A stretch of DNA of 63,782 bases, counting the filler, from Octopus bimaculoides (Eukaryota): NCBI RefSeq assembly GCF_001194135.2. It is 4 parts of 4 records of this genome, joined end to end, with 100 filler letters (N's around TTAATTAATTAA, not from the genome) between each part and the next. Parts side by side here need not be neighbours in the genome. Positions count along the whole stretch, not along the records: positions 36,112 to 62,417 come from NC_068998.1; 3 more parts are not named here. One strand, written 5' to 3'. A program made the position numbers and the translations under genes. The notes below the pieces were generated by a model. It had not been told where the DNA came from, made no database searches, and saw only the letters and a list, made by a program, of their open reading frames with translations. Below, one piece after another: positions 37,021-60,647 of the stretch. Every line of letters starts with the position of its first letter. Positions within the stretch are counted from its first letter, which is position 1.

Positions 37021-40000
37021 ATGTTCTCCTTGGAGCGTACTCATTATTATAGCAGTCACATCTTCCTGTTTTATCTACTGCTGTTGGTTACCGCACAACA
37101 GTATAGTCTTCGATTGGACGAACACAACTCGCCTCCTGACGTTATACCTACTAGTCCATACAACTTGAAGTACTCAGTACCATTAAATGAACTGACTAGT
37201 TATCCAATTTTTGCCTATTTTTATAGGTTGGATGGAAGTGAAGTTAAGGATGGTTCTCTAAACGATCAAGAAGTAACAGTGACCAGTAGGAGTACTACGA
37301 ACGTTGACAGCTGGAGAATGTCCGGTGGTAAGCTATGTCAAAATACTAATCCTGATGTATTTCTACCCATGAGATATAATCGCCACACATATGTCAAGAA
37401 ATGTGGCTCGACAATCGGACCGACCACATTAAAAGTGAAAGTATTCAATGGAACCATTATAATCGATTGGCTTATGCATTCTCACGAAAGGTATTTAGTG
37501 CCAGACATCGACCGAATATATAGAATCGATGTCCCTGGTCTATCTATTCGGATAGACACGTATCCTTTCCGTATAACCACTCCTGCTGCTAAACTCGTCA
37601 TCACCAAACACCCACCGTCAAACATCCAAGCCAACACAGGTTTTAATGTTACGGCCGAGATACATGATAATGTAGGTAAAGTTATTACGTCGGGTCTAGA
37701 CTCCATCGCTTTTGTAGAGTTGACTGTACCATATCGCTATAAAGAATTTTATTATCGAAGGAATTTAGACATGATGTTGAAACACACTGACATCCGATTG
37801 GCAGGCAGTTCGACCATGATACACCAAAGTACCAATGATATAATTATACGAAAACAAGCCGTAGCAGGTAAAGTTATATTCGAAGACATTCGGATTTTAG
37901 ATGTTGTAGTCGGCTTTCGCTTGAATTTAACTATGTATATGGCGAGAGATCCATGGATCAGAATACCGAACTGTAAAACTTGCTATGATGATTTAAGTCG
38001 TAAAAACATTTATGAATCCGAAAACTATGTTAAATTTTTTGATTTATCCGACAGCATTCTTGCAGGAATTCCAGCTATGGCTTTTACGAAACCTATTAAT
38101 GTTGAAGCCCAGAGACTTGCAAGTTTACAAATTATTCACAATTTAAAATCAACCAGTTCATCTATCAAAATTACTCGAAATTTTCCTATTCCAGGAGAAA
38201 TGAAAATAATGATTATAGATGTTAATGGGAATAGAATTTACTCTGGTCCAGATTCCAAGATAAACATCGATGTTAAAACGACCCCCCCGAATATATGCCT
38301 TTCAACGGACATGACAAAAACGATAATAGATGGCTTGGTGGAACTAAGAGGTTCAATATGTTCAATTTCTAGTTCGGTGAGGTTGATAATTTCCTCAACT
38401 TCACATGCAGGTGTAAGCGTTCAAACTCCAATTTTTACTGTGATTGGTCTAGTTCATATAGGGCACATTGGGGATTTCAATACAGCTGGAACGATTAAAA
38501 GTCCTTATCCACATATAGATACTTTTGTAAAATTCGCTGCTGCTGACATAAGCTGGGGCGGGATTCCTGGAATTTTTGAACAGTATGGTATGTCAATTGC
38601 AGTTGAATCAATCAACACTAATGATGAAATAGAATTTACTGTTCAGCAGTACCAAATGTATAAAGAAACACATCAAAATAGCGAATCGGAATTGAGAGGT
38701 ATCCTTCTGTCAGCAAGTTCATTGGTTACAAAAGCCGTAGCCAGAAACTCAATGATAGACAACATTCCGGTCATTGCATTGACTGAGAAAGATAATTCTT
38801 TTCTGCGATACAATTTATTCAATAAAATTTGCTGGGGATGGCCAGAAATTTACAGTTTTTTTCTGAAAGCTTGTAAAGATAGAAGATGGCTCCAGATGTC
38901 ATCTATCAGCTCCAGCGAAAAGTCTGTTGATATTGAATTCTTCAACAGTGCACAAATATTCGACGTTAAGATCACAATGCCAGTGATCGTCCCAGAATTC
39001 GACTCTTACAGCGATTCCCCTTGGCAACCAGAATTTTATGGTGAAGCAATGAGATTTCTAAAGGATGCCGGGACAAAAATAATTATTTGTTTTGCCACTC
39101 GCTCTTTACCATACATTTTGCGTTCTGGAATCCGATTTGGTATTTCTGCACTTGATGGTTATCAGTGGCTTTTTATAAGTGAAAATGCTCGATCCTTTCC
39201 TTTAATGAACGAAGCCGTCTGTCAATGGGAACCGAAATGTACCCATGCTTATCGTGGGTCACTACTATTCATAGAAACTTACGATTTTGGAAACTTCCAG
39301 ACAGAAAGATGGCTACATACACTCGAAAGATTTTATAGTATTGACAGAACAGAGTATTTAGGAAGTAAAGCAATATATCCAAATGAAGAACTAGCATCTT
39401 ATTTGGCACTGGGTTATGATGCCATGTGGTTGTTGGCTCAAGCAATCAGCAACATAGTTTCCAGACAAAAGACCGCTTTTGGAGATGAAATTTCAAACGA
39501 ACTGAAAAAAATTAATTTGAATGGACTGTCAGGAAAGGTGCGTCTCGATGAGAGCGGTAAAAGATCTGACTTTATGGGAAGTATCATTTTGATTAATCCC
39601 ATCGGCAATGTTTCTGAATCCCACCCTAATTTAGTAGCCCTCCCGATAAGACTTATACTATGGAAAGATTCTGGTGAAATAGAGTTGAATTACCAAGCTA
39701 AATACCCATTGAATAAGCCTCCATATAATTATGTACTACCACCAATGTCGCTTCCCGTGGCTGATACGTACAATATTAGAACATATCATTCAGTTTCAGG
39801 AATGATTAGCGAGCATGAAAATAAATTAATTGAAGCTCCAAACGAACCATGGCCATCTATAAGCTTTGAACGGACGGAGAAGTTAGTAACACCTTTTAGG
39901 TGTAAACAAAACTGTGGTGATCTTATATCGGAAGACGATGTTACAGTCTTCAATAATGGTGTCTGCATTGCGGAGAACGTGTGTGTGTGTAACAAAGGAT

Positions 40001-42072
40001 ATTTAGGAGATGGATGTATTAATGTTTCATGCAGTTGCGTTCATGGCGGATGTAGCTCGCCAGACATATGTACCTGTAAATCGGGCTGGAAAGGGTCGCG
40101 CTGTGACCAACCGGTATGTAACACTCCTTGCAAGCATGGAAAATGCGTGAAGCCCGATAAATGCCAGTGTGAATCATCAATGTGGCTCGGTAAATATTGC
40201 TCAATACACCTTGCAGCCATTCTCGTTCCAGTTATTTGTTCTCTGGTGTTGCTCATATGTTTTATATATCTATTGATAAGGTATTTAATCAAACGCATCC
40301 AACTCAGAACTGCACTGGCAAATCTCGAGTGGCTCGTTATCTGGGACGAAGCTGTTAAAATCGATTCTCAAGAAAAAGATACGAAGAACGTTTCAACTGC
40401 GACCCATGTTAGTCGAATGTTTAATGACTTGTACACGTGGAAGCGTGAGAAATGGTTTGTGAAACGCTTCAACTGTAGAACCATTGACCTTGATGATGAA
40501 GCGGTCCGACTAGAAATGGTTGAACTGACGACTTTGAATCACAAAAATTTAATCATTTACGGTGGAGCCTGTCTCACATATCCAAACGTGTCTTTTTTTC
40601 TTGAGCCAGCGAATAAGGGCAGTCTTGAAGATATTCTTATCAATGATGCTATACAACTTGGTTGGGATTTCCGATTTTCTTTTCTAAAAGACATCTGCTG
40701 TGGAATGGATTTCATTCACAGTAAAACTAATATTGGCTCTCATGGACGTCTCAAATCATCGAATTGTTTACTTGATAACCGCTGGTGCATTCGTTTGTCC
40801 GGTTTTGGCTGTCCATCAATTCGCTATGGACAGTACCTTATGGCTGGAGAAGAGAAAGATTGGCAGACTGAATTATTAAAGATGAACGAACTTTTTTGGA
40901 CGGCTCCTGAACTACTAATAACTGTTGAGTGTCTAAATGATGTTCAGATGGGTACTAAAGAAGGGGATATTTATTCATTTGGAATAATTGCTTCTGAAAT
41001 TGCCACCCGAGACATACCGTTCGCTTATGAACGGATGTTCCTATCTGTAAGCGCTATTTTGGATCTCATAGTGGAGAAAGACAGTCCTCTTCTAGAAGAG
41101 GAGAGAAAAGTATGGCAGTCAATTGGAGGCGATATATTTGTTATTCGGCCACAACTTAAAAGCGAGCATTTGCCTGAAGGGAAAACAACTCAGAGAAAAT
41201 TTCTCAAAATGCTTGAAGACGTATGGAACGATGAACCTCTGCTCAGACCTCCATTTTCAAAGCTTCTTGCAGTGTTAGATAATATTCATCCGACAAAGGG
41301 AGAACTAATGGACAACTTAATTCGACTATTGGAATCTTATTCCAATAATCTTGAACAAGTGGTGATTGAGCGCACCCACGACCTCGAAGTAGAAAAGGCA
41401 AAAATTGATCATATTATAAGTCAAATGTTGCCCAAGAAAGTGGTAGAGGAATTAAAACACGGAAATAAAGTGGAACCAGAAGACTTCAGCTGTGTCACTG
41501 TATTCTATAGTGATATAGTCGGATTTACAACGATCGCGAAAAACAGCCAGCCTATGCAAGTGGTTGATCTGTTGAACAACCTCTACAGTACATTCGATTC
41601 TATACTGCACAAATATGACGTCTACAAAGTGGAAACTATCGGAGATGCCTATGTTGTTGCAAGTGGCGTCCCCGAACGAAATGGAAATGCTCATGCAGGT
41701 GAAATTACGACAGCAGCGATGGACTTAGTCATAACCATGTTGGCAATGAAAGTACCGCATTTACCCGACTGTAAACTTCTGTTGCGTATCGGCGCTCACT
41801 CTGGACCAGTTGTTGCCGGAGTTGTTGGTTTAAAGATGCCTCGCTACACCCTTTTTGGCGACACAATGTTAATTGCAGCCACGATGGAATCGACTTCAGA
41901 ACCTTTGCGTATTCAGCTTAGTGAACACACAGTAAAAATTCTTGATCAACTCGGAGGATATGAAACTGAGCTACGCGGAGAAATGACTGTTGCTGGACGT
42001 GCTCTAACAACATTCTGGCTGATAAGTAAAGACGGATACGAAGGAACTCTTCCTCAGGTTGTGTGTCAATAA
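37021..42072 (+). CDS. Intronless receptor-type guanylate cyclase-like protein, 1683 aa (SP - 3 Ig-like modules - ANF receptor domain - 3 EGF - TM - pseudokinase - coiled coil - cyclase with degenerate C2-side residues)
   Basis: Uninterrupted ORF. Hydrophobic signal aa ~1-25; LALGYDAMWLLAQA and NGLSGKVRLDESGKR (ANF receptor); three Cys-rich EGF units aa 961-1060; TM aa ~1064-1086; HGRLKSSNC, FWTAPELL, GDIYSFGII (rGC kinase homology); YSDIVGFT, VYKVETIGDAY, GLKMPRY (cyclase). Confidence 0.93.
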   Translation: MFSLERTHYYSSHIFLFYLLLLVTAQQYSLRLDEHNSPPDVIPTSPYNLKYSVPLNELTSYPIFAYFYRLDGSEVKDGSLNDQEVTVTSRSTTNVDSWRMSGGKLCQNTNPDVFLPMRYNRHTYVKKCGSTIGPTTLKVKVFNGTIIIDWLMHSHERYLVPDIDRIYRIDVPGLSIRIDTYPFRITTPAAKLVITKHPPSNIQANTGFNVTAEIHDNVGKVITSGLDSIAFVELTVPYRYKEFYYRRNLDMMLKHTDIRLAGSSTMIHQSTNDIIIRKQAVAGKVIFEDIRILDVVVGFRLNLTMYMARDPWIRIPNCKTCYDDLSRKNIYESENYVKFFDLSDSILAGIPAMAFTKPINVEAQRLASLQIIHNLKSTSSSIKITRNFPIPGEMKIMIIDVNGNRIYSGPDSKINIDVKTTPPNICLSTDMTKTIIDGLVELRGSICSISSSVRLIISSTSHAGVSVQTPIFTVIGLVHIGHIGDFNTAGTIKSPYPHIDTFVKFAAADISWGGIPGIFEQYGMSIAVESINTNDEIEFTVQQYQMYKETHQNSESELRGILLSASSLVTKAVARNSMIDNIPVIALTEKDNSFLRYNLFNKICWGWPEIYSFFLKACKDRRWLQMSSISSSEKSVDIEFFNSAQIFDVKITMPVIVPEFDSYSDSPWQPEFYGEAMRFLKDAGTKIIICFATRSLPYILRSGIRFGISALDGYQWLFISENARSFPLMNEAVCQWEPKCTHAYRGSLLFIETYDFGNFQTERWLHTLERFYSIDRTEYLGSKAIYPNEELASYLALGYDAMWLLAQAISNIVSRQKTAFGDEISNELKKINLNGLSGKVRLDESGKRSDFMGSIILINPIGNVSESHPNLVALPIRLILWKDSGEIELNYQAKYPLNKPPYNYVLPPMSLPVADTYNIRTYHSVSGMISEHENKLIEAPNEPWPSISFERTEKLVTPFRCKQNCGDLISEDDVTVFNNGVCIAENVCVCNKGYLGDGCINVSCSCVHGGCSSPDICTCKSGWKGSRCDQPVCNTPCKHGKCVKPDKCQCESSMWLGKYCSIHLAAILVPVICSLVLLICFIYLLIRYLIKRIQLRTALANLEWLVIWDEAVKIDSQEKDTKNVSTATHVSRMFNDLYTWKREKWFVKRFNCRTIDLDDEAVRLEMVELTTLNHKNLIIYGGACLTYPNVSFFLEPANKGSLEDILINDAIQLGWDFRFSFLKDICCGMDFIHSKTNIGSHGRLKSSNCLLDNRWCIRLSGFGCPSIRYGQYLMAGEEKDWQTELLKMNELFWTAPELLITVECLNDVQMGTKEGDIYSFGIIASEIATRDIPFAYERMFLSVSAILDLIVEKDSPLLEEERKVWQSIGGDIFVIRPQLKSEHLPEGKTTQRKFLKMLEDVWNDEPLLRPPFSKLLAVLDNIHPTKGELMDNLIRLLESYSNNLEQVVIERTHDLEVEKAKIDHIISQMLPKKVVEELKHGNKVEPEDFSCVTVFYSDIVGFTTIAKNSQPMQVVDLLNNLYSTFDSILHKYDVYKVETIGDAYVVASGVPERNGNAHAGEITTAAMDLVITMLAMKVPHLPDCKLLLRIGAHSGPVVAGVVGLKMPRYTLFGDTMLIAATMESTSEPLRIQLSEHTVKILDQLGGYETELRGEMTVAGRALTTFWLISKDGYEGTLPQVVCQ

Positions 42073-42189: not shown

Positions 42190-42321
42190 AGTAATAATAA
42201 TGATGATGGTGATGATGATGACAACAGCAACAACAATACCAGCAGTAATAGTAGTAATAGCAGCAGCAGCAACAACAACAGCAGCAGCCTCAGCAGCAGT
42301 AGTAGTAGTAGTAGTAGTAGT

Positions 42322-42394
<73 letters not shown>

Positions 42395-42689: not shown

Positions 42690-42905
42690 TTAACCTATTT
42701 CTAATTTAGGCACAAAGCCAGCGATTTTGAAGTGGGGTTTAGTCGATACCATCAAACACCAGTACTTGAATGCTACTTTATTTTATCAATCCCGGAGGCA
42801 CGAAAAGTAAACTTGTACTCGGTGGTGAACTCAGAATATAAAAAGCCGATAGAAATATCGTAAAGTATTTTATCCCAACGCTCTAACAATTCTGTCAATT
42901 CACTG
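42690..42905 (-). mobile_element. SINE family B, diverged
   Basis: GGCACAAAGCCAGCGATTTTG...GAACTCAGA...TTCTGTCAATTCACTGCC. Confidence 0.65.
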
Positions 42906-42910
42906 CCAGT

Positions 42911-42960
<50 letters not shown>

Positions 42961-43079: not shown

Positions 43080-46000
43080 ATTAGTATTCATGATGATCAT
43101 GATCATTACTCAATCCTTCTGATAGAGGAAGATTCAAGGGCCAATCGAAGAACTCCACCATTTAAGAACTCCCTTAACATCAAGAGAAACTGCTCCCCCA
43201 CCTCCCAGTTATTACAGGCTTATGCTGAGAACGTTTTCATTTTCACCTACTTCTCAATAAATTCATTTATCTCCGCCATTAATATTTTTCAGATTGCTGG
43301 AGTGGATCATTCACTGATCCTTTTGACCGATCGGTAGTGGACATTCTAGATAAGCGCTTAGTCTCAGTCTTTTCTTCACGCTGGACTGCAGCTCTGTCAA
43401 GAAGACAAGCTGCAAAGAAATACCTCACGAATGGTACAGAGAATGCCTAACGCACCATGGTGCTGGCAGCAGATGGACTACACTACTAGTAGAATACGTC
43501 CTTTTCACAATAAATTGAATACCAGATGCTCCAATTTGATCAGATTGTAATTAGAGCAATGCACAATGGTCAGATGGTAAATCATAACTGAGCCGATGTT
43601 GGTATTCGTTACTTTTGCCCGACCTCCGAACTTTTAAGGACAGCTTCCTTTAAGCCCATTTCTAGGTAAAGCTGGCTACCCTGTTCGTTACCTTATTCCA
43701 GTTCCGATTCACCTAGATGTCAGAACCGAACCAGACACCGAGCAGTTTAATCGGTTCCACGACACTACCCATGGCATAGAACTGCCTCTCCAGGTACCGA
43801 TCTGCAAGCTCATGGATTTGTCCGGGTTGATCTTAGTTTATTAATAATATCATCTCGTATTCCTCTGGAATAATCTTTTCTACTATAGGCACAAGGCCTG
43901 AAATTTGGGGGAGGGAGATAGTCGATTTCGTCAACCCTGGTGTTTCACTGGTACTTAATTTATCGACCCCGAAAGGATGAAAGGAAAAGTCGACCTCGGC
44001 GTAATCTGAACTCAGAACGTTGCAGCAGACGTGCTAATGATTCTGCTAACATTCCTCTGGAATAATGCAGAACGCCTCCACTTCACTGGATGAACCTGTT
44101 CAGGATTGCGCTTCCTCGACCTGAACACCGATGACAAGCACCGATATTTTCGCTAACACCTTGGCTAAAATATTTGCAGAGTTGTGTACCGAAAATTGTC
44201 TACGAGGTCTCTTTACCATGTCCTTTCTCAGCAGTATCACCACTCTCCAGCTCACAGCATTAGAAATTATTCCGTTCTCTACTAGTCGCAATAGACATCT
44301 CCCAAATGATTGCCAAACAAGTTTGACATGAATTCGAACAAAATCGAAGTGCAGGCCATCCAAACAATTCATGTGCAACTGCTCCTCGCCTCCAATATTT
44401 CAGCTGCTTTCCACAGCATTTCGTAACTTCTGACCAGAGTGGCGACAAGCCACCGAGATTCGAAATCAGTCCACTACCATCTTCAACCTATCGCTCGCCT
44501 GAAAAGACGAGCAGTGTGTTGTCGAAAGCCGCACCCACTTATCCGGAACCGTGTTGCACGAGCCTGCCATGACCCGTTAAAGACCTAATTGTGGTTTCGT
44601 AACACGGTTCATAGCCCTGGCAACGCAACCTTCGCATTTCACACTGAGGAAATGGCCAAGAGCCATTCTCGCTGCTAACATATCGGTCGCGATTCCTTTA
44701 ATAGTTATCCCTTCTAGATTGCTAACTCCAACTTTTTTCTTCCTATCGCTAGCTCTTTGCTAAACGCTACTGTGTCAGATCTCATCGCTCATTTAAGGGT
44801 GTCCCACCACTGTTTGTTAACGATTTCTCCCGTCAAATGCTATTAATGAATTAGTTAATTCATTAATATGGTCCTTGTTGCCTTTGCGCACCAGTAAGGA
44901 CACATTAAATTTCCAGTAACCTGGTCCTTGTCTAGAGGTCCTGTCAAAGTCGATCGAATAAATCGCAAATTTGTGGTCTGTGTAGTTGATGTCCACATTA
45001 TCCCCATCGGCTTACCTGTCAAATACTCTATCTAGTAACGATCTAGACGATCTATTGCAATTGTTTTATATCCACACTGGCACGTCAGAGAAATCGAGTC
45101 AGTACCTGTCAGATAATTGAAACTTCTGAGCAAGTTTACGAGGTTTTAGCACTCCTTCTTGACTCTAGCTCCACATTCTCTCCGTGCGTCTTCAATACTG
45201 TTACATTCCCCTACAAGTGATGATAATCGGACGTTTCTAACTAGGGCTCCTACTAATCTTTTTTTTTTCTACCGCTGTTTCTATACTAAACATTATCGAT
45301 TCTATTTTAATCGCTCTTTTTTTAAAGCGTACCTACATTTGTTGTTAAACGATTGCTCCCGTCATCGCTCAATTAATTAATTCGCTTATCCGGCCTCTGT
45401 GAGCTTGGCGCGCGAAAGCAACGCATTCAGCTTCCAGTAACCGGGATCCTGACTACAAAATCTATCTAGGTCAACCGTATAGAACACAGATTTGTGATTT
45501 GGGTAACAGACGATTTTAAATTGTGGACAATCTGTGCTATCCTATCTGCAAGTCTATTGAATACTCTATCTAGAAACGATCTGAACGATCCGATTCATTT
45601 TGCTCACGTTCACAATAGTACATTCTGGAAATCCAGGTGGTACGTGACAGATTGTTGGAAACGTCTGAGTAGGTATGTAAGACTTTTGCACCTCCTCTTT
45701 TGTTAGCTAGGTCTACACAGTCCCTACATGCATCCAAGATACTGTTCCGATTACCCATATGCACTAAAGAGCGACACGTTTCTAGGAAGGCCTCAAGACA
45801 CCCGAAGAAGTTCGGCCGACCGCGCTCCTGCCGGGGCGGCGTGGGGGTACTTGTTTGTTTGAAGGTATGACCTTTACTGCTGGTCAAATACCACCGACTT
45901 ACCTTCTAGGTCCCGGAAGATGGTTTGTATCACAATATCTAACCCTTTCTAAAACAGCACAGAGACTTCGCCCCCCCCCTATTCCATCAGGTATAGAGAT

Positions 46001-48511: not shown

Positions 48512-49650
48512 GGTGCTACTTTGGCGTGTGATCTACAACTTAAAGGGCGATTACTTTAGGTTACTTTTTAGTTCCTTTTCAATTTCTAAAAACCTTTAAG
48601 ATGTTGGCTAAAGATTTTTTACAATAAATTCTTTTGTACATACTTAGCATGTCTTGCAAACAACTTGCACATGCAAGTGCTACTAGTCGAGAATTCCGCA
48701 TACCGGAAGCCAGCAAGTGTATGGGGTCATCAGGAGAGAATGCGCGCCGTTTCGGGACCTACCTCTCGATAGCATCAATGTGCACCCCGCCCCTTACTGA
48801 TATGAGGCCCAGCTTGCTAGATCAACTGGTAATTAAATATAGCTAAATATTACTCTAGCCATCGCTCATCGTCCCTTTTTAACCAAATTCAGTGGCTAGC
48901 CTTTTCCACTGTAGTTTGGATATCAGTCATGGTGGTATTCACCTTACGATGAGTTAGGCCTAACGATAACAACAGTCGTCTCACACTGAGTCCAACAAAC
49001 CCTCTACTTCGATTGGAAAATTCTCCGCTTTNNNNNNNNNNNNNNNNNNNNNNNNNNNNNNNNNNNNNNNNNNNNNNNNNNNNNNNNNNNNNNNNNNNNN
49101 NNNNNNNNNNNNNNNNNNNNNNNNNNNNNNNNNNNNNNNNNNNNNNATAATGGTCAATCTTTCGAGCCCGAGCGGCGTCCATGTTATCTTCATGAGGAAC
49201 CGTTAACTCGACTAGATTTACAACTTTCTTCCCTTCACACCTCATTAAAATGTTCGGTTTTTTCGTAACTGGGACGGGAAAGAGTCCCTGGCATCCTGGT
49301 AAATTTGCAGTCACCTCCTAATAGCCGTTCCACTTTTCATTTCTCACAGGAAGTTTCTTATTCTTCTTGAAACGGATCCGCTGACCTGAGCGCACGAAGG
49401 TAATGAAATCTCTAGTTGGTACTTTCAATGGATTTTTCAAAATTCTTACAATTTTAATAATAATAAAACCATGTTTCATTTATGTCTTTGTAAATAATAA
49501 TAATAATGATAAACCATGAATAAACAACGTAATAATTAAAATAAGCGATTAGATCACACAAGCTTGACATTCGCGAGTTTTGCAAAGAAACTAAAAACTA
49601 ACCTAAAGTGATCGCCCTTGAAGTTGTAAATCGCACGCCAAAGTAGCACC
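48512..49650. repeat. 62-bp inverted repeat pair (48512-48573 / 49589-49650) enclosing the Hero fragment
   Basis: 57/62 identity between the left arm and the reverse complement of the right arm. Confidence 0.75.
48850..49400 (-). mobile_element. Hero-clade-like RLE non-LTR retrotransposon 3' end
   Basis: KPNILM...KVVNLVELTVPHEDNMDAARARK..HY...RGFVGLSVRRLLLSLGL...VEKASH. Confidence 0.7.
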
Positions 49651-52732: not shown

Positions 52733-55700
52733 TACCCCCACACCTTTGAAAACTAACTAATCTACCTCTACCCCCGCCCTACTCACATCCCTCTATTCAA
52801 TTCCATATTCCTCTATTGACCATAACACCCCACCACACCCCATCCAATACCAACTGAATGTCCTTGTCCTACCCGCCAGCCACTGAACCAGTCAACTCAT
52901 TTCCCTCAAATAATAGCCATCACTGTTTCTCAATCTCAACCTTCATACAAACTAACACAAAGGTCATTCTTCACATACTACCTAAACTATCATTCCCCCT
53001 TCTTCCACCTCTACTGCTATCACTAGCCTCATTATTAACCCTAACCCCCCAAACTATTTTCTCCTTCCACTACTCTCTATTTAAACACTACAACTCCTTT
53101 TTCTAATACACTTAGTTCTCCATTCCACCTTTAATCTCCATTCTGTCAACACTTCAAGTGTAAAATTCTTCCCTGAACATGGACACTGGTGGTATCCGAT
53201 GATGAAATCAAGTTACAAGCATTGTTTTGGACCACCAAGCCCCCAGAAACAGCTGTTGGATTCGTAAAACTCCTACTCAACCCCCTTAATGTATACATAA
53301 GTACATTTTTGTATCAAATGTATTTAATATTTTCTGTATATCGACTTGCCTAACATTTGTCCCTACATTTACTCCTGTACCTGCTCAAGTTCAAATCTCT
53401 TGAGCACTTCGAAGTGTATTCTATACAGAGAATACTCATCACCAGAACGGTCCCCAATTATGCCAACCTCTTAAGTACATTATATCATTATAAAACACGT
53501 TTTATTCTGATGAATACAGGAATTTAACAATGAAAGATATCTAAAATTATTTTAAATCCACGGCACATACATATTAATGATCCTACGACTGGCTCTTGCC
53601 GGTAATATTGTAAAATTCATGTATTTATCGGAAGAAATGTTTTTTTTTATAATGATATAATGTACTCATTGATCAATTAAAACATTTGTTAAAAACGGCT
53701 ATAATGAATTGACACCTGTCCATCAACTGTTATTTATTTATAATTCCCCTGTCTCGGAACATGGCCCTCGCATATATATTCCGAAGTATATTATGGACTG
53801 TATATTTAATATATATGTACATGTCTGAATAGATCAAGAGAGAATTATATATTCAGTCGGGTCCAGTTAACGGCATACATTACCCGAATATCCTTCTGCC
53901 AGTACTTTTGTACCAAGGTTGGAATTCATCTATAACTGTAGTGTGTACATTTTATTCCGACATAATTAGGTGCCTCAACTTTAAGCACCTTATTCAACTG
54001 GATCTTGTTATATTAGGTGTGTGTGTGCGTGTGTATATATATGCATATATATATATATANNNNNNNNNNNNNNNNNNNNNNNNNNNNNNNNNNNNNNNNN
54101 NNNNNNNNNNNNNNNNNNNNNNNNNNNNNNNNNNNNNNNNNNNNNNNNNNNNNNNNNNNNNNNNNNNNNNNNNNNNNNNNNNNNNNNNNNNNNNNNNNNN
54201 NNNNNNNNNNNNNNNNNNNNNNNNNNNNNNNNNNNNNNNNNNNNNNNNNNNNNNNNNNNNNNNNNNNNNNNNNNNNNNNNNNNNNNNNNNNNNNNNNNNN
54301 NNNNNNNNNNNNNNNNNNNNNNNNNNNNNNNNNNNNNNNNNNNNNNNNNNNNNNNNNNNNNNNNNNNNNNNNNNNNNNNNNNNNNNNNNNNNNNNNNNNN
54401 NNNNNNNNNNNNNNNNNNNNNNNNNNNNNNNNNNNNNNNNNNNNNNNNNNNNNNNNNNNNNNNNNNNNNNNNNNNNNNNNNNNNNNNNNNNNNNNNNNNN
54501 NNNNNNNNNNNNNNNNNNNNNNNNNNNNNNNNNNNNNNNNNNNNNNNNNNNNNNNNNNNNNNNNNNNNNNNNNNNNNNNNNNNNNNNNNNNNNNNNNNNN
54601 NNNNNNNNNNNNNNNNNNNNNNNNNNNNNNNNNNNNNNNNNNNNNNNNNNNNNNNNNNNNNNNNNNNNNNNNNNNNNNNNNNNNNNNNNNNNNNNNNNNN
54701 NNNNNNNNNNNNNNNNNNNNNNNNNNNNNNNNNNNNNNNNNNNNNNNNNNNNNNNNNNNNNNNNNNNNNNNNNNNNNNNNNNNNNNNNNNNNNNNNNNNN
54801 NNNNNNNNNNNNNNNNNNNNNNNNNNNNNNNNNNNNNNNAGAAGAGGTCAGAAAAGGGTCAAGTGATGGAGACACCGCTTCGAAGACCGTTGTGACTTCG
54901 ATGAACGCTTTGATGAATATAATGTTTTCAACACCCATCTAGCTTATATTAACCATCTAGACATCAAAACAAACAGTGGTTTTGCAAAAATGAAAACTAC
55001 CTAAAAGTGTCTAAAATCGACTGGAAATCACAAAATAAGCATTTTCAAGTTTTGTTGCTTTTTCATGGTTATTTGCCAAATTTTGTGAGTTTGTGTTTTC
55101 TGAAAACGGTTGTGACTTCGGTATTAGAGAAATAGAGGATTATTTATTTGCGTTACAATTTAGAAAAACAGTAAATAGTTGTCACTATAGTGCTCGGAGT
55201 TTCAAATGTCGGAGCGAAGAGCTACGACACATTCTCGTCGATTATTAATGGCAACAGACGCTATGAAAAGGAAATCATTAAATAAAAGGGAAGTAACTCT
55301 AATAGATGGAAAAAGAAAAATGAAAAGATACACGCAGCAATATTCTCACAATACATACACATAAACCTCCTGCGTTCACAACGTCTACATACATACACAT
55401 TCACACAAACATGTATACGTACATGTACACACACACGCACACACACAAATATATATGTATGTAAGTACTCATACATGCACACATATCCACACACATAACG
55501 CACACACACACACAGACACACACACACATACACACACACACACACACAACACACACACATATATATATACGCAACCTCATCCTCATATACACATAGTTGC
55601 TTACATGCATACAAGTAACATAATACATATATATTTAGACATTTATACGTATAAATATATGTATATATATACAGACATACATTCACACTCCCGCATACAT

Positions 55701-56001
55701 ATATATATATGTATACGTATGTATATATATTGTATGTATATATATGTGTATGCGTGTGTATATATGTGTATGTGTATATGTATGTATATGAGTATAAGAC
55801 TGTCTGGTGCATACGTGCGACTTTCATGCACACGTCCCCTTTACTTATACGGATATGCATATGATTGTATATGTGCGGGTGTAGGAGTGATATATATATA
55901 TNNNNNNNNNNNNNNNNNNNNNNNNNNNNNNNNNNNNNNNNNNNNNNNNNNNNNNNNNNNNNNNNNNNNNNNNNNNNNNNNNNNNNNNNNNNNNNNNNNN
56001 N

Positions 56002-57317
56002 ATACTATTTAAACGAAGATTCAGGTTAAACTAAAATTCTTAACGAACCTTTGGATTAAAAAACAATTTCAACGAAGTTTTACATTAAACTAAATTTCTT
56101 AACGAATTTTTCGTTTAAAATACAAATTAAATGAATTTTAGGTAAAACTATAATAATTAACGATTCTTACGTTTAAAATGCAATTTAAACGAAGTTTTAG
56201 GTTAAACTAAATTTCTTTCCGAATCTTACGTTAAGAATAACATTTAAACAAAGTGTTTGTTTAAACTAAAATTCTTAACAAATCTTTCGTTTAAAATACA
56301 ATTTAAAGGAAGTTTCAGTTTAAACTAAAATTCTAAACGAACCTTTATTTAAAAATACAATTGCAACGAAATTTTAGGTTAAACTAAAATACTTAATGAA
56401 TCTTTTCGTTTAAAATACAATTTAAACGAAGTTTTAGGTAAAACAAGAATTCTTAACGATTCCTACGTTTAATACACAATTTAAACGAAGTTTTAGCTGA
56501 AACTAAAATAAATAACTCATCTTACGTTTAGAATACAATTTAAACGAAGATTTAGTCTAAACTAAGTTGCATTTAGAATTCAATTTAAACGAACTTGTTG
56601 GTTAAACTAAAATTCTTAACGAATCTTTCGTTTAAAATACTATTTAAACGAAGTTTAAGGTTAAACTAAAATTCTTAAGGAATAATGTTTCACAAACTAT
56701 TTAAACGAAGTTTTAGGTTAAACTGAAATTCTAAACGAATCTTACGTTGAAAATATAATTTCTACGAAGTTTTATTTAAACTAATATCCCTAACGAATCT
56801 TACGTTTGAAATACAATTTAAACGAAGTTGTACGTTACACTAAACTTCTTCACGAATCTTACCTTTAAAATACAATTTAAACCAAGTTTTATGTTAAACT
56901 AAAATTCTTAACGATTCTTACGTTTAACATACAATTTAAATGCAATTTTAGCGTGTATAATTTAAACGAAGTTTTAAGTTAAGCTAAAGTGTTTAACGAA
57001 TCTTACGTTTAAAATACAATTTAAACGAAGTTTTAGTTTAAACTAAAATTCTCAACGAATCTTTCGTTTAAAATACATTTTAAACGAAGTTTTCGTTTAA
57101 ACTAAAATAATTAACGAATCTTCCGTTTAAAATACAATTTAAACGATGTTTTTGTTTAAACGAATATAATTAAGGCATGTTACGTTTAAAATAAAATTTA
57201 AACGAAGTTTTAGGTTAAACTAATATTCTTAACGAAACTTTCGTTTAAAATACAATGTAAACGAAGTTTTAGGTTAAACTTAAATTCTTAACGAATCTTT
57301 CTTTTAAAATACAATTT
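56002..57317. repeat. 59-bp AT-rich satellite, ~22 units, dimer of ~29/30-bp hairpin subunits
   Basis: Consensus AACGAATCTT(A/T)CGTTTAAAATACAATTTAAACGAAGTTTTAGGTTAAACTAAAATTCTT; unit starts at 56995, 57054 and 57113 (period 59). Confidence 0.9.
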
Positions 57318-57551: not shown

Positions 57552-57901
57552 TCAGCCTATGATGGAACTTGGAGATGGTTTAGTGTAAGAGTAATGTTTC
57601 CACGTCTGTATAAGTTGGTAGAATTTGTCTCCAGGACATGATGTTTCCCTCACATCTCGGTGACCATATAGTCTGTAGTTGGCAGTAATTTTACCCAAGC
57701 ATACTCCATAGTCAAGAATGTTTTTAACGGCATCTAAGGCAAGATTGTTGGGAAGTCTGTGCATAAAGTTTCCCATCACAGACACAGCAATAGCAACTCT
57801 GTTGAAATGCAATGTATGGGCACCTTCTCTGTCCCAGCTACGGCCAACATAAACGCGTCCATCTTCTCCAACCAAGAAATTATAACCAATGTCGAACCAG
57901 C
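57552..57901 (-). CDS. PGRP: Peptidoglycan recognition protein (Amidase_2), terminal coding exon; upstream exons not found
   Basis: GWFDIGYNFLVGEDGRVYVGRSW..EGAHT...GNF...GHRDVRETSCPG..YQLIQTW; phase-1 acceptor TTTACAG|GC at 57902/57901; TGA at 57552-57554. Confidence 0.9.
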
Positions 57902-58299
57902 CTGTAAATATAAAAATGTATATGTGTGTGTGAGTGTGTAAGAAAAGACATTTAATAACAGAAAAGTATACTATGAGAATACATGCATGCACACACACTG
58001 ACAAGCTCACTGACACTGAGCGTGAGCTATATGCTTTTATAGAGAGAGAATATAAGGTTAAGATGTATAGAGAGGGGGGAAAATTTACCATGAGAAAAGT
58101 GAAAAATGAAAGTGATAGACAAATAGAGACATTCCTGTTTTCAGATTTGACATTTTAAAATTGTGAAGATTAAAAAAAAATTTTAAGTATGATGCACACT
58201 GGGTTTGAGTTTGTAATACATTTATTCCCGAAAAATTTTAGAAAAATCTTACGGGGGTTTTAAAGTTTGATCATTTTTTCCAATCAGAAAACAAGATAT

Positions 58300-59396: not shown

Positions 59397-60647
59397 AAAA
59401 TTTCAGATGTTGGATCGTGTTAGACACAGCACTGATTGCTGCAAAAGAGAGAGTATATCCACTGACAGCTTTTCGGTGCATTCAAAACTCACATACCCCC
59501 ACCCAATTTTCCATGACTGGTTAGGGCCTGAAATACTCCAAACGGACGCATAGCATGTTGCTTAGTCGAATTAGCCCATCATTTTCTCCACAAATGTTTT
59601 GTTGTCAATGCTGCACTTTCCCATATCACCTGTTTCAACATGACTGTAATATATTATACACAAACTATGNNNNNNNNNNNNNNNNNNNNNNNNNNNNNNN
59701 NNNNNNNNNNNNNNNNNNNNNNNNNNNNNNNNNNNNNNNNNNNNNNNNNNNNNNNNNNNNNNNNNNNNNNNNNNNNNNNNNNNNNNNNNNNNNNNNNNNN
59801 NNNNNNNNNNNNNNNNNNNNNNNNNNNNNNNNNNNNNNNNNNNNNNNNNNNNNNNNNNNNNNNNNNNNNNNNNNNNNNNNNNNNNNNNNNNNNNNNNNNN
59901 NNNNNNNNNNNNNNNNNNNNNNNNNNNNNNNNNNNNNNNNNNNNNNNNNNNNNNNNNNNNNNNNNNNNNNNNNNNNNNNNNNNNNNNNNNNNNNNNNNNN
60001 NNNNNNNNNNNNNNNNNNNNNNNNNNNNNNNNNNNNNNNNNNNNNNNNNNNNNNNNNNNNNNNNNNNNNNNNNNNNNNNNNNNNNNNNNNNNNNNNNNNN
60101 NNNNNNNNNNNNNNNNNNNNNNNNNNNNNNNNNNNNNNNNNNNNNNNNNNNNNNNNNNNNNNNNNNNNNNNNNNNNNNNNNNNNNNNNNNNNNNNNNNNN
60201 NNNNNNNNNNNNNNNNNNNNNNNNNNNNNNNNNNNNNNNNNNNNNNNNNNNNNNNNNNNNNNNNNNNNNNNNNNNNNNNNNNNNNNNNNNNNNNNNNNNN
60301 NNNNNNNNNNNNNNNNNNNNNNNNNNNNNNNNNNNNNNNNNNNNNNNNNNNNNNNNNNNNNNNNNNNNNNNNNNNNNNNNNNNNNNNNNNNNNNNNNNNN
60401 NNNNNNNNNNNNNNNNNNNNNNNNNNNNNNNNNNNNNNNNNNNNNNNNNNNNNNNNNNNNNNNNNNNNNNNNNNNNNNNNNNNNNNNNNNNNNNNNNNNN
60501 NNNNNNNNNNNNNNNNNNNNNNNNNNNNNNNNNNNNNNNNNNNNNNNNNNNNNNNNNNNNNNNNNNNNNNNNNNNNNNNNNNNNNNNNNNNNNNNNNNNN
60601 NNNNNNNNNNNNNNNNNNNNNNNNNNNNNNNNNNNNNNNNNNNNNNC

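What the first reader, a model, noticed from the sequence alone, without database searches (positions are those of the whole stretch)
37096..40200. Unusual ectodomain: three tandem Ig-like modules, a Venus-flytrap domain and three EGF repeats on one receptor cyclase
Seen: ~450 aa precede the ANF-receptor domain and contain three related modules (aa ~35-188, 189-364, 365-476). They share a D..G..(I/V)..G..S motif (RLDGSEVKDGSLN / DNVGKVITSGLDS / DVNGNRIYSGPDS), a central G motif (VFNG / VAGKVIF / IDGLVEL) and an ending T.P(F/I).V (DTYPFRI / FTKPINV / QTPIFTV). Module 2 has an insert with CKTC. Three six-cysteine EGF-type repeats (aa 961-1060) sit between the flytrap and the TM helix. Established: NPR-type rGCs normally have only the flytrap domain outside the cell. 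Inference: the modules resemble beta-sandwich repeats of the bacterial Ig-like / fibrocystin-L C-terminal type, so this may be a shuffled adhesion-, matrix- or microbe-sensing receptor.
Basis: partly seen in the sequence, partly recalled or inferred. Interest (0 to 1): 0.7.

Follow-up and report, generated by a model that had tools for sequence, protein, structure and literature searches.

The report
Octopus receptor cyclase with composite ectodomain
This is a real single-exon Octopus bimaculoides gene for a receptor guanylyl cyclase-type protein with three Ig-like modules, a Venus-flytrap domain and three EGF repeats outside the cell; the design is shared by other molluscs and a centipede, has not been described as a family, and its cyclase lacks key catalytic residues yet is strongly conserved.

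Summary
Window 37021-42072 (+) is one uninterrupted 1683-codon ORF of Octopus bimaculoides. It encodes a signal peptide, about 450 aa with no Pfam match, a flytrap (ANF_receptor) domain, three six-cysteine EGFs, a TM helix, a kinase-homology domain and a cyclase domain.

AlphaFold2 with a 19-sequence alignment (pLDDT 85) makes the N-terminal region all-beta, and Foldseek matches tandem Ig-like arrays. Raw pairwise similarity between the modules is at chance level. Profiles do link module 2 to 3 (95%) and module 1 to 3 (69-77%). Modules 2 and 3 also match an unnamed ~104-aa tandem Ig-like repeat of giant bacterial proteins.

The architecture is not confined to cephalopods. It occurs in Argonauta, partly in a bivalve model, and in the centipede Strigamia, under generic names. 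O. sinensis RefSeq splits the gene in two.

Two further findings:
- The cyclase keeps its metal-binding Asp residues but has lost the catalytic Asn and Arg and the specificity Cys, yet evolves under dN/dS 0.02. This suggests a heterodimer subunit or a non-catalytic role.
- The ectodomain evolves almost neutrally, and module 3 is a sharply bounded divergence hotspot.

Verdict: a new variant of a known kind, of moderate interest. The ligand and any adhesion or microbe-sensing role are untested.

The parts
36962..36979 (+). Pyrimidine-rich tract ending in AG (ttgtgtttgtttttgcag), a possible 3' splice site. It would put a 5'-UTR exon upstream, with the whole CDS in one exon.
   Evidence: Read directly from the sequence. 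This is inference only; no transcript data.
37021..42072 (+). Complete uninterrupted CDS (1683 codons plus stop) of a receptor guanylyl cyclase-family protein.
   Evidence: The exact protein is found in O. bimaculoides GCA_001194135.2, chromosome CM046618.1. The O. sinensis orthologue is also one intact ORF.
37021..37095 (+). Signal peptide (aa 1-25; hydrophobic core IFLFYLLLLV, ...VTA|QQ).
   Evidence: Sequence; modelled as an N-terminal helix, aa 7-23. The cleavage site is inferred.
37096..37584 (+). Module 1 (aa 26-188): beta-sandwich with a ~43-aa insert carrying conserved C106 and C128. Probably a divergent copy of the same Ig-like domain type.
   Evidence: AF2 block pLDDT about 67-92, all-beta. 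hhalign to module 3: 69%, E 4e-5, 0/100 shuffles. With the insert removed: 77% to M3 and 48% to the bacterial repeat. No Pfam hit.
37585..38112 (+). Module 2 (aa 189-364): Ig-like core (189-306) with two insertions, then a ~45-aa insert containing C318-x-x-C321 before the last strand (FTKPINV).
   Evidence: hhalign to the bacterial 104-aa repeat: 97.6%, E 4e-12, over the whole domain. hhalign to module 3: 95%. AF2 pLDDT about 80-97.
38113..38454 (+). Module 3 (aa 365-478): compact Ig-like domain with conserved C426 and C447. It coincides with a sharply bounded divergence hotspot between Octopus species (the block is aa 347-478).
   Evidence: hhalign to the bacterial repeat: 87%, E 4e-6. AF2 pLDDT about 74-95. 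Nucleotide identity to O. sinensis is 74-84% here against 94-100% in the flanks.
38455..39720 (+). Venus-flytrap (ANF_receptor) domain, aa ~479-900 (Pfam core 670-854).
   Evidence: Pfam E 1.3e-11, 44.6 bits against a cut-off of 25.4. Orthologues match nearly the whole model. The profile hits GABA-B2, T1R2a, NPR-C and mGluR flytraps. No GPxC motif.
39721..39900 (+). Linker between flytrap and EGFs (aa 901-960), containing the conserved NEPWP motif.
   Evidence: Alignment A3. It evolves fast between Octopus species (78% aa identity).
39901..40200 (+). Three juxtamembrane six-cysteine EGF-like repeats (C961-C999, C1004-C1028, C1033-C1060).
   Evidence: All 18 Cys are invariant across the 8 aligned family members in A3.
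40207..40278 (+). Single transmembrane helix (aa ~1063-1086), followed by basic RYLIKR.
   Evidence: Only hydropathy peak, at 1059-1093; sequence.
40444..41271 (+). Kinase-homology domain (aa 1142-1417) with an rGC-type HGRLKSSNC loop and no catalytic Asp.
   Evidence: Pfam PK_Tyr_Ser-Thr E 2e-20; alignment to human NPR1.
41272..41472 (+). Linker / dimerisation helix (aa 1418-1484).
   Evidence: Aligned to the NPR1 linker. Weak HNOBA hit. 100% aa identity to O. sinensis.
41473..42024 (+). Class III cyclase domain (aa 1485-1668). Metal-binding D1498 and D1542 and E1538 are retained.
   Evidence: Pfam Guanylate_cyc E 7e-53. dN/dS 0.02 against O. sinensis.
41839..41892 (+). Degenerate catalytic motif PRYTLFGDTMLIAATMES, against canonical PRYCLFGDTVNTASRMES: Cys->Thr1610, Asn->Leu1617, Arg->Thr1621.
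   Evidence: Alignment to human NPR1 and paralogues. Identical in O. sinensis and Argonauta P0004. The same three positions are also changed in L001.

Best explanation
SHOWN. The feature is the ectodomain-coding part of an intact, single-coding-exon gene of Octopus bimaculoides. The gene encodes a 1683-aa type I membrane protein of the receptor guanylyl cyclase (rGC) family. The domain order is: signal peptide, three beta-sandwich (Ig-like) modules, Venus-flytrap (ANF_receptor) domain, linker, three EGF repeats, one TM helix, kinase-homology domain, linker helix, class III cyclase domain. Modules 2 and 3 are homologous to each other and to an unnamed ~104-aa tandem Ig-like repeat of giant, mostly bacterial proteins. 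Module 1 is probably a third, insert-bearing copy. The protein belongs to a family with the same layout in octopods, in a partial bivalve model, and in a centipede (modules 2+3 in the latter two). So it is an old protostome rGC subfamily that databases have not recognised, not a cephalopod-specific shuffle.

INFERRED mechanism. The distal Ig-like modules, which evolve fast (above all module 3), together with the flytrap form the recognition surface for an unknown ligand. The three disulfide-rich EGFs act as a rigid stalk that passes flytrap or dimer rearrangements to the TM helix. This is analogous to the cysteine-rich domain between flytrap and membrane in class C GPCRs. From the TM helix the signal runs through the kinase-homology domain and linker helix to the cyclase dimer.

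This subunit keeps both metal-binding Asp residues and the specificity Glu. It lacks the transition-state Asn and Arg and the specificity Cys, while the domain is under very strong purifying selection. A homodimer is therefore predicted to be catalytically dead or very weak. The protein most likely works as the 'metal-binding half' of a heterodimer with a paralogue that has a full catalytic set, forming one active site as in DAF-11/ODR-1, sGC alpha/beta or AC C1/C2.
For: Gene reality:
- ORF and domains.
- Exact match to GCA_001194135.2.
- The O. sinensis orthologue is one intact 1682-codon ORF, 94.7% nt identity.

Fold:
- AF2 pLDDT 85.1, pTM 0.78, all-beta over aa 26-478.
- Foldseek PDB top hits are PrgB Ig-like domains, complement/A2M MG arrays, the mastigoneme, SbsC and FdeC, at E 8e-10 to 1e-6.

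Repeat relationship: hhalign and shuffle controls. Link to the bacterial repeat (period 103-104 aa): M2 97.6% E 4e-12, M3 87% E 4e-6.

Family:
- Full-length homologues P0004 and P0007 (Argonauta hians) and P0005 and P0006 carry the same N-terminal region with flytrap, EGFs, kinase-homology and cyclase domains.
- P0008 (Sinanodonta, partial) carries modules 2+3, flytrap, EGFs and part of the kinase-homology domain. P0023 (Strigamia T1JDE2) carries modules 2+3, flytrap, EGFs, kinase-homology and cyclase domains.
- The EGF triple directly before the TM helix is present in all of them, with invariant cysteines.

Cyclase:
- Motif comparison with NPR1 and paralogues.
- Paralogues P0005 and P0007 are canonical.
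- Cyclase dN/dS 0.02 and intracellular pN/pS 0.14, against ectodomain 0.90, Fisher P 3e-8.

Against: - No expression, ligand or enzymatic data exist.
- A canonical partner paralogue has not been shown in the O. bimaculoides genome. P0005 and P0006 are from unnamed ENA assemblies, and P0007 is from Argonauta.
- The role assigned to the missing Asn and Arg comes from established class III cyclase enzymology (my knowledge plus PMC5225109), not from a test on this protein. Residual homodimer activity cannot be excluded.
- Module 1's homology is only suggestive. M1-M2 is 4-5%. The 77% and 48% values were obtained after I removed an insert chosen post hoc.
- Column-shuffle nulls are lenient for beta-rich profiles.
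- Module superposition could not be done.
- The EGF-stalk and Ig-recognition roles are analogies.
Confidence: 0.6

Rival explanations
1. Pseudo-cyclase or decoy. The receptor does not make cGMP in any complex. Its conserved cyclase, linker-helix and kinase-homology domains serve as a dimerisation or scaffold module, or as a dominant-negative regulator of canonical rGCs. The ectodomain acts in binding or adhesion.
For: Loss of Asn, Arg and Cys in the catalytic motif in O. bimaculoides, O. sinensis, Argonauta and L001. Strigamia P0023 and paralogue P0006 are also degenerate at these positions, and P0023 appears to have Asn in place of the first metal Asp. Strong conservation shows function but not catalysis.
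Against: Both metal-binding Asp residues and the guanine-specifying Glu are strictly kept in the octopod clade. That is the pattern expected for one half of a heterodimeric active site rather than for a purely structural domain. Canonical paralogues with the same ectodomain exist.
Confidence: 0.25
2. The three N-terminal modules are not repeats of one domain. Only modules 2 and 3 are Ig-like relatives. Module 1 is an unrelated beta-rich domain, and the shared motifs are generic beta-strand and turn patterns.
For: Pairwise similarity is at chance level. M1-M2 hhalign is 4-5%, and M1 against the bacterial repeat is 3.8% without editing. Module 1 is 163 aa, larger than an Ig domain.
Against: After removing the disulfide-bearing insert, the alignment extends through the 'central G' motif (77%) and reaches the bacterial repeat (48%, E 2e-4). 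The M1 end plus linker, PFRITTPAAKLVITKQPP, mirrors the bacterial inter-repeat consensus FxVTPAAAxQLVVTTQPP. The AF2 strand order is compatible.
Confidence: 0.25
3. Non-functional retrocopy or annotation/assembly artefact. The intronless ORF is a decaying processed pseudogene, or the N-terminal region belongs to a different gene.
For: The 5-kb coding region lacks introns, which from my knowledge is unusual for an animal rGC. O. sinensis RefSeq models two genes here. The related locus L001 has several frame breaks.
Against: The 1683-codon ORF is intact in DNA of about 38-41% GC. The orthologous ORF is intact and collinear in O. sinensis, so the split there is an annotation error. Intracellular pN/pS is 0.14 and cyclase dN/dS is 0.02. 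The same collinear architecture occurs in Argonauta, a bivalve and Strigamia. No poly(A) tract follows the stop codon.
Confidence: 0.03

Closest known systems
Natriuretic-peptide-receptor-type receptor guanylyl cyclases (GC-A/NPR1; PDB 9bcv, 9bcl)
   Same: Type I topology. ANF_receptor flytrap, single TM helix, kinase-homology domain with the HGxLKSSNC loop, linker helix and class III cyclase. The intracellular part aligns to human NPR1 at E 4e-114 (about 39% identity).
   Different: About 450 extra N-terminal residues forming three Ig-like modules. Three EGF repeats between flytrap and membrane. The flytrap is no closer to NPR than to class C GPCR flytraps and lacks the GPxC chloride motif. 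The catalytic Asn, Arg and Cys are replaced. The coding region is a single exon.
Obligate heterodimeric cyclases: C. elegans DAF-11/ODR-1 rGC, soluble GC alpha/beta, mammalian AC C1/C2
   Same: One subunit retains only part of the catalytic residue set, so a single active site must be assembled from two different chains (PMC5225109). Here the metal-binding Asp pair is kept and Asn/Arg are lost, under strong purifying selection.
   Different: No partner has been identified. The candidate partners (P0005- and P0007-type paralogues) keep a full set rather than a complementary loss. Heterodimerisation is untested.
Class C GPCRs (mGluR, T1R, CaSR): flytrap plus cysteine-rich stalk
   Same: A flytrap is followed by a compact disulfide-rich module immediately before the membrane. 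The flytrap profile hits T1R2a (E 7e-9) and mGluR flytraps; its best flytrap hit, GABA-B2 (E 6e-10), is a class C receptor that from my knowledge lacks the cysteine-rich domain.
   Different: The stalk here is three EGF repeats of Jagged/WIF1/teneurin type, not the class C cysteine-rich domain. The effector is a single-pass cyclase, not a 7TM domain. The mechanistic analogy is inference.
Tandem bacterial Ig-like repeat surface proteins (Big_1/invasin-like fold; e.g. Bdellovibrionales MAG proteins MCB0421093.1 and MCB0387123.1; structural neighbours PrgB, FdeC, SbsC)
   Same: Modules 2 and 3 align to the ~104-aa repeat (consensus QLVVTTQPPxSVTAGxxFxLxVxAEDAxGNVVTS...GVATFSGLTL...YTLxATS...FxVTPAAA) at 97.6% and 87% hhalign probability. 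Beta-sandwich fold.
   Different: Neither the octopus modules nor the bacterial repeat reach any Pfam or NCBIfam threshold; there are only faint Big_1, Invasin_D3 and Big_3_5 hits. The animal modules carry large insertions and disulfides. There are three copies on a signalling receptor rather than 7-29 copies on a giant protein.

Membership tests
Receptor (membrane) guanylyl cyclase | Type I topology: signal peptide and one TM helix between ectodomain and enzyme part | tested here: met
   Single hydropathy peak at aa 1059-1093, plus an N-terminal hydrophobic leader.
Receptor (membrane) guanylyl cyclase | Extracellular ANF_receptor / periplasmic-binding-protein-type flytrap | tested here: met
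   PF01094, 44.6 bits against a cut-off of 25.4. Orthologues cover model positions 6-349 of 353.
Receptor (membrane) guanylyl cyclase | Kinase-homology domain lacking the catalytic Asp, followed by a linker helix | tested here: met
   PF07714 E 2e-20. HGRLKSSNC aligns to NPR1 SHGNLKSSNC.
Receptor (membrane) guanylyl cyclase | C-terminal class III nucleotide cyclase domain | tested here: met
   PF00211 E 7e-53, 179 bits.
Receptor (membrane) guanylyl cyclase | Complete catalytic set allowing homodimeric activity (2 metal Asp, Glu and Cys for guanine, transition-state Asn and Arg) | tested here: not met
   The Asp pair and Glu are present. Cys->Thr1610, Asn->Leu1617, Arg->Thr1621.
Natriuretic peptide receptor subfamily (GC-A/GC-B) | GC-A-type ectodomain with the S(x)nGPxC chloride-binding motif, and natriuretic-peptide binding | tested here: not met
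   There is no GPxC anywhere in the protein. The flytrap profile is nearer to GABA-B2 and T1R2a than to NPR-C. Peptide binding is not testable with these tools.
EGF-like domain | Six cysteines with EGF spacing; match to EGF models | tested here: met
   3 x 6 Cys. PF07974, 26.9 bits against a cut-off of 22.1. The profile hits Jagged-1 at E 8.5e-24 and WIF1 at E 3.5e-23.
Bacterial Ig-like domains (Pfam Big_1 / Invasin_D3 / Big_3) | Score above the Pfam gathering threshold | tested here: not met
   No Pfam hit for any module even at E<=10. The related bacterial repeat itself is only faintly Big_1/Invasin_D3.
Ig-like beta-sandwich fold (E-set-like), tandem | Predicted beta-sandwich domains with structural matches to tandem Ig/MG arrays | tested here: met
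   AF2 pLDDT 85.1. There are 219 Foldseek PDB matches at E<=1e-3, led by PrgB Ig-like domains at 8e-10.
Three repeats of one domain | Modules superpose with the same topology | not testable with these tools
   Model coordinates are not exposed. Proxy evidence: hhalign M2-M3 95%, M1-M3 69-77%, M1-M2 4-6%.
Fibrocystin-L (PKHD1L1) C-terminal Ig-like type | Sequence or structure match to PKHD1L1 domains | not tested
   No PKHD1L1 sequence was available. None appears among the top 50 Foldseek PDB hits.
Obligate heterodimeric rGC (DAF-11/ODR-1 type) | The subunit lacks part of the catalytic set while retaining the complementary part | tested here: met
Obligate heterodimeric rGC (DAF-11/ODR-1 type) | A co-expressed partner supplying the missing residues; activity only on co-expression | not testable with these tools
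   Canonical paralogues exist in Argonauta (P0007) and in an unnamed assembly (P0005). There are no O. bimaculoides paralogue or expression data.

The most novel reading that the evidence does not exclude
This would be an ancient protostome receptor class. A fast-evolving, bacterial-type Ig-like module (module 3, possibly carrying long-lived divergent alleles), together with a flytrap, would provide species-specific recognition of a gamete, pheromone, chemotactile or microbial ligand. The signal would be read out through an obligate heterodimeric cGMP-producing pair, a receptor-level counterpart of sGC alpha/beta.
Probability: 0.2. Interest if true: 0.75.

Novelty: new variant of a known kind. 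Interest (0 to 1): 0.5.

Why it matters
- Receptor guanylyl cyclases are textbook 'flytrap only' receptors. A conserved subfamily that stacks three Ig-like recognition modules above the flytrap and an EGF stalk below it widens the range of ligands (macromolecular, particulate, cell-surface) that might be coupled directly to cGMP.
- The degenerate but strongly constrained cyclase gives a concrete, testable case of subunit specialisation in rGCs outside nematodes.
- The hypervariable module 3 marks where specificity probably lies.
- On the practical side, the work exposes a split-gene annotation in O. sinensis RefSeq. It also exposes an Ig-like repeat family, abundant in giant bacterial proteins, that Pfam and NCBIfam do not model.

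Tried and rejected
1. Pairwise Smith-Waterman and BLASTP between the three modules gave no signal above shuffles. Profiles were needed.
2. Pfam and NCBIfam on each module at E<=10 or E<=1, and phmmer of aa 1-500 against PDB, gave nothing or noise.
3. The first AF2 run, with a 4-sequence alignment, was unusable (pLDDT 43.5) and was not used for fold search.
4. The search for homologous proteins never returned more than three proteins (P0001-P0003). The single-sequence search found only these, the N-terminal profile found the same three, and the ectodomain profile found nothing, although P0004-P0008 are in the collection. Named taxon sampling therefore rests on 30 exact look-ups. Many ENA, Logan and JGI homologues remain taxonomically unassigned, so presence or absence in deuterostomes and cnidarians is unknown.
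5. Literature searches for this architecture found no description. The library is open-access only.
6. Gene conversion from a sampled paralogue as the cause of the module-3 divergence block was rejected. Neither Octopus species' module 3 is closer to Argonauta or to paralogues P0005-P0007, and there is no paralogous copy in the piece.
7. A recent retrocopy was rejected. No poly(A) tract follows the stop codon. O. sinensis shares the uninterrupted single ORF, L001 is collinear without intron-sized gaps, and P0069 (1446 aa) sits on a 4.5-kb contig.
8. A shared ancestral degenerate cyclase state for Strigamia and the octopod clade was considered because both have 'LIA'. It is left open, because an NJ tree places the canonical paralogues P0005 and P0007 closer to the window protein than Strigamia is.
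Full report
**What is at the coordinates.** The piece 36112-62417 has one long ORF, 37021-42072 on the + strand, of 1683 codons. There is no competing ORF of 150 aa or more on either strand within it. Its exact product is recorded from Octopus bimaculoides assembly GCA_001194135.2, chromosome CM046618.1, around 30.40 Mb.

Pfam places four domains:
- ANF_receptor, best stretch aa 670-854
- EGF-type matches at aa 964-1064
- a kinase-homology domain, aa 1142-1417
- Guanylate_cyc, aa 1485-1668, E 7e-53

Pfam finds nothing in the first ~480 residues. There is one hydropathy peak, aa 1059-1093, which is the TM helix. An N-terminal hydrophobic leader precedes ...VTA|QQ. The finding's range, 37096-40200, is exactly the mature ectodomain.

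**Observation check.** The 100 residues from C961 to C1060 contain 18 cysteines in three six-Cys units. These pass Pfam EGF_2. As a family profile, they hit Jagged-1, WIF1, Delta and teneurin EGFs at E 1e-23 to 1e-14. All 18 cysteines are invariant across the 8 aligned family members.

**Are the three modules related?**
- On the single sequence, no. Smith-Waterman scores are at or below the shuffle mean (z -0.6, -1.0, +0.4).
- An HMM search of 1.84 billion representatives with a 4-sequence profile recovered homologues. These gave a 19-sequence alignment (A2).
- With module profiles cut from A2, hhalign gives M2-M3 94-95% (E 1e-7 to 2e-8), M1-M3 69% (E 4e-5) and M1-M2 4-5%.
- Against 100 column-shuffled target profiles, the observed scores were 49.1, 33.4 and 21.0. 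The null was about 10.5 +/- 2 (maxima 16.8, 19.8 and 23.9). The observed score was reached 0/100, 0/100 and 1/100 times. This null is lenient for beta-rich profiles.
- I removed a 43-residue insert from module 1 (aa 92-134, carrying conserved C106/C128). The choice was post hoc, from the model's secondary structure.

Modules 2 and 3 are therefore homologous. Module 1 is probably a third, more derived copy.

**Structure.**
- AF2 with four sequences failed (pLDDT 43.5).
- With A2 it gave pLDDT 85.1 and pTM 0.78, with aa 26-478 almost entirely beta strands.
- Foldseek against the PDB returned 219 matches at E<=1e-3. The top ones are tandem beta-sandwich arrays: PrgB Ig-like domains (8e-10), complement C5 and A2M MG domains, the Chlamydomonas mastigoneme, the S-layer protein SbsC, and the invasin-like adhesin FdeC.
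- Low global TM scores (0.15-0.28) are expected for multi-domain queries.
- Model coordinates are not exposed to scripts, so the modules could not be superposed. This is the main gap in the 'one fold, three times' claim.

**Relation to bacterial Ig-like repeats.** Most of the 276 HMM hits are long proteins (up to 5336 aa). They match profile positions ~190-245, the start of module 2, between 3 and 29 times, with a modal spacing of 103-104 residues. The named ones are from Bdellovibrionales MAGs. Others carry a prokaryotic N-methylation motif or sub-threshold Big_3 hits.
- A profile of 150 such repeats aligns to module 2 over the entire domain (97.6%, E 4e-12), with two insertions on the octopus side. 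It aligns to module 3 at 87% (E 4e-6).
- The bacterial inter-repeat consensus FxVTPAAAxQLVVTTQPP closely resembles the module 1/2 junction, PFRITTPAAKLVITKHPP.
- Neither the octopus modules nor the bacterial repeats reach any Pfam or NCBIfam threshold. There are only faint Big_1, Invasin_D3, Big_3_5 and Ig_GEX2_N hits.
The 'fibrocystin-L' comparison was not testable.
- Similarity is remote (about 25% in the profile alignment) and does not argue for recent horizontal transfer.

**The family.**
- Full-length relatives with the same N-terminal region, flytrap, EGFs, kinase-homology and cyclase domains are P0004 and P0007 (both Argonauta hians, annotated 'atrial natriuretic peptide receptor 1-like') and P0005 and P0006 (unnamed ENA assemblies).
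- P0008 (the bivalve Sinanodonta woodiana, a partial model) has modules 2+3, flytrap, EGFs and part of the kinase-homology domain.
- P0023 (the centipede Strigamia maritima, T1JDE2, 'guanylate cyclase') has modules 2+3, flytrap, EGFs, kinase-homology and cyclase domains.
- Fragments occur in Tegillarca, Saccostrea and Gigantopelta.
- P0069, from a 4.5-kb metagenome contig, has only module 3 before the flytrap and has more EGFs.
- In every member the EGF block abuts the TM helix.
- In O. sinensis the orthologous locus is a single intact 1682-codon ORF, 94.7% identical at nucleotide level. RefSeq splits it into a 472-aa 'uncharacterized protein LOC118766412' and a 1160-aa rGC.
- L001, an unnamed assembly, carries a collinear copy with several frame breaks, either a pseudogene or long-read indel errors.
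- The single coding exon is therefore old within the group. No poly(A) tract follows the stop codon.

The architecture is not a cephalopod invention, but it is not annotated or described as a family either. Five literature searches found nothing.

**Flytrap and stalk.** The family ectodomain profile hits GABA-B2 (E 6e-10), T1R2a (7e-9), NPR-C (3e-7) and mGluR flytraps. The S(x)nGPxC chloride motif reported for GC-A-type ectodomains (PMC5225109) is absent. 'NPR-type' is thus only a database label. A flytrap followed by a compact disulfide-rich module at the membrane recalls class C GPCRs. I infer that the EGF triple is a rigid transmission stalk. This is analogy, not a test.

**Intracellular part.** From the TM helix to the C-terminus the protein aligns to human NPR1 (E 4e-114), with the rGC-type HGRLKSSNC loop.

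In the cyclase domain the two metal-binding Asp residues (YSD1498IVGF, ETIGD1542AY) and the Glu are present. The canonical PRYCLFGDTVNTASRMES is replaced by PRYTLFGDTMLIAATMES, giving Cys->Thr, Asn->Leu and Arg->Thr.
- The motif is identical in O. sinensis and Argonauta P0004.
- The same three positions are changed in L001 (RYTLFGETMQIAANLEA).
- Paralogues P0005 and P0007 are canonical.
- P0006 and Strigamia P0023 are degenerate in other ways.

In class III cyclases each active site takes the Asp pair from one chain and the Asn, Arg and specificity residues from the other (established enzymology; PMC5225109 for rGCs). A homodimer of this protein should therefore be inactive or nearly so. A heterodimer with a canonical paralogue would have one complete site.

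**Selection.** Nei-Gojobori comparison of O. bimaculoides with O. sinensis (dS 0.083 overall) gives the following:

| Region | dN/dS |
|---|---|
| Cyclase | 0.02 (99.5% aa identity) |
| Linker helix | 0 |
| Kinase-homology domain | 0.26 |
| TM and juxtamembrane | 0.15 |
| Module 1 | 1.16 |
| Module 2 | 0.66 |
| Module 3 | 1.50 |
| Flytrap | 0.57 |
| EGFs | 0.48 |

The whole ectodomain has pN/pS 0.90 against 0.14 intracellularly (Fisher P 3e-8). The 'degenerate' cyclase is therefore under very strong constraint, which argues against a decaying gene. The ectodomain evolves close to neutrality overall.

Within the ectodomain there is a sharply bounded block, CDS nt ~1040-1440 (aa 347-478, i.e. 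module 3):
- Nucleotide identity is only 74-84%, against 94-100% on both sides.
- Amino-acid identity is 62% and pN/pS is 1.40, which is not significantly above 1 (P 0.16).
- Synonymous divergence is also raised 2.7-fold (P 0.002).
- Framework residues are kept.
- Neither species' module 3 is nearer to Argonauta or to sampled paralogues.
- There is no donor copy in the piece.

Diversifying selection, old allelic lineages, conversion from an unsampled copy, or a local mutation hotspot all remain possible.

**Most likely mechanism.**
- Shown: a conserved, selected, single-pass receptor with the order Ig-like x3, flytrap, EGF x3, TM helix, kinase-homology domain, cyclase.
- Inferred: the distal Ig-like modules, especially module 3, and the flytrap bind a fast-changing ligand. 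The EGF stalk relays the change. The cytoplasmic part signals as the metal-binding half of a heterodimeric cyclase.
- Rivals: a non-catalytic pseudo-cyclase or decoy (0.25); module 1 being unrelated to modules 2 and 3 (0.25); a dead retrocopy or artefact (0.03).
The neighbouring PGRP exon (below) is only a neighbour.

**Novelty.** This is a new variant of a known kind. It is firmly an rGC-family protein. Its ectodomain architecture, subunit-type catalytic degeneration and hypervariable module have not been described in the literature I could search, and available domain libraries do not model the Ig-like modules. Interest is moderate (0.5). Everything functional is still inference, and the taxon range beyond molluscs and one myriapod is unresolved.

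Noticed in passing
window 38060-38454 (aa 347-478, module 3): Sharply bounded divergence block between O. bimaculoides and O. sinensis. Nucleotide identity is 74-84% against 94-100% in the flanks, and aa identity is 62%. pN/pS is 1.40 and synonymous divergence is also about 2.7-fold higher. Conversion from sampled paralogues does not explain it.
   Followed up: partly
window 41839-41892 (aa 1607-1624): The cyclase catalytic motif is PRYTLFGDTMLIAATMES, having lost the catalytic Asn and Arg and the specificity Cys while keeping both metal Asp residues. It is conserved in O. sinensis and Argonauta, and the domain's dN/dS is 0.02.
   Followed up: yes
L003 6001-11046 (O. sinensis GCA_006345805.1, CM016873.1): The orthologous gene is one intact 1682-codon ORF. 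It is annotated as two genes: a 472-aa 'uncharacterized protein LOC118766412' with a spurious intron, plus a 1160-aa rGC.
   Followed up: yes
window 57627-57890 (-), within ORF 57552-58091: Exon-like ORF encoding the C-terminal part of a peptidoglycan-recognition-protein / N-acetylmuramoyl-L-alanine amidase domain (Pfam Amidase_2, E 7e-14). It lies about 15 kb downstream of the receptor gene on the opposite strand.
   Followed up: partly
window 36113-36268 (-): Fragment of a mariner/Mos1-type transposase N-terminal HTH (Pfam HTH_48, E 1.4e-6) at the left edge of the piece, preceded by a stop codon.
   Followed up: yes
window 56002-57317: AT-rich satellite with a 59-bp unit (118-bp higher-order unit), about 22 copies, in the lowest-GC part of the piece.
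   Followed up: no
window 42298-42394 and 42900-42960; N runs around 49000-49150, 54060-54830, 55990-56000 and 59670-60630: (AGT)n and related trinucleotide microsatellites lie immediately 3' of the gene. Several assembly gaps (runs of N, seen as X in ORF translations) create artefactual long ORFs in all frames.
   Followed up: no
window ~36530-36610, ~42700-42800, ~43890-44000: Three copies of a short interspersed element sharing ...ggtactt(a/c)attt(t)atcga(c/t)c..gaaaggatgaaaggcaaa..., flanking the gene on both sides. Read by eye.
   Followed up: no
L001 10001-15018 (ENA ERZ21867824, ctg120598l): Collinear homologue (45% N-terminal identity, 64% intracellular) with at least five frame changes. 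It has the same class of cyclase degeneration (RYTLFGETMQIAANLEA). It is either a pseudogene or carries long-read indel errors.
   Followed up: partly
P0069 (JGI/IMG metagenome contig, 4.5 kb): Intronless 1446-aa family member with only module 3 ahead of the flytrap and at least four EGF-like repeats. Its motif is GESVNVASQMES (Arg->Gln). The source organism is unknown.
   Followed up: partly
P0009 (Bdellovibrionales MAG, MCB0421093.1): A 2566-aa bacterial protein with 14 copies of the unnamed 104-aa Ig-like repeat also carries MAM domains (Pfam E 7e-23). From my knowledge this domain is mostly found in animal proteins.
   Followed up: no
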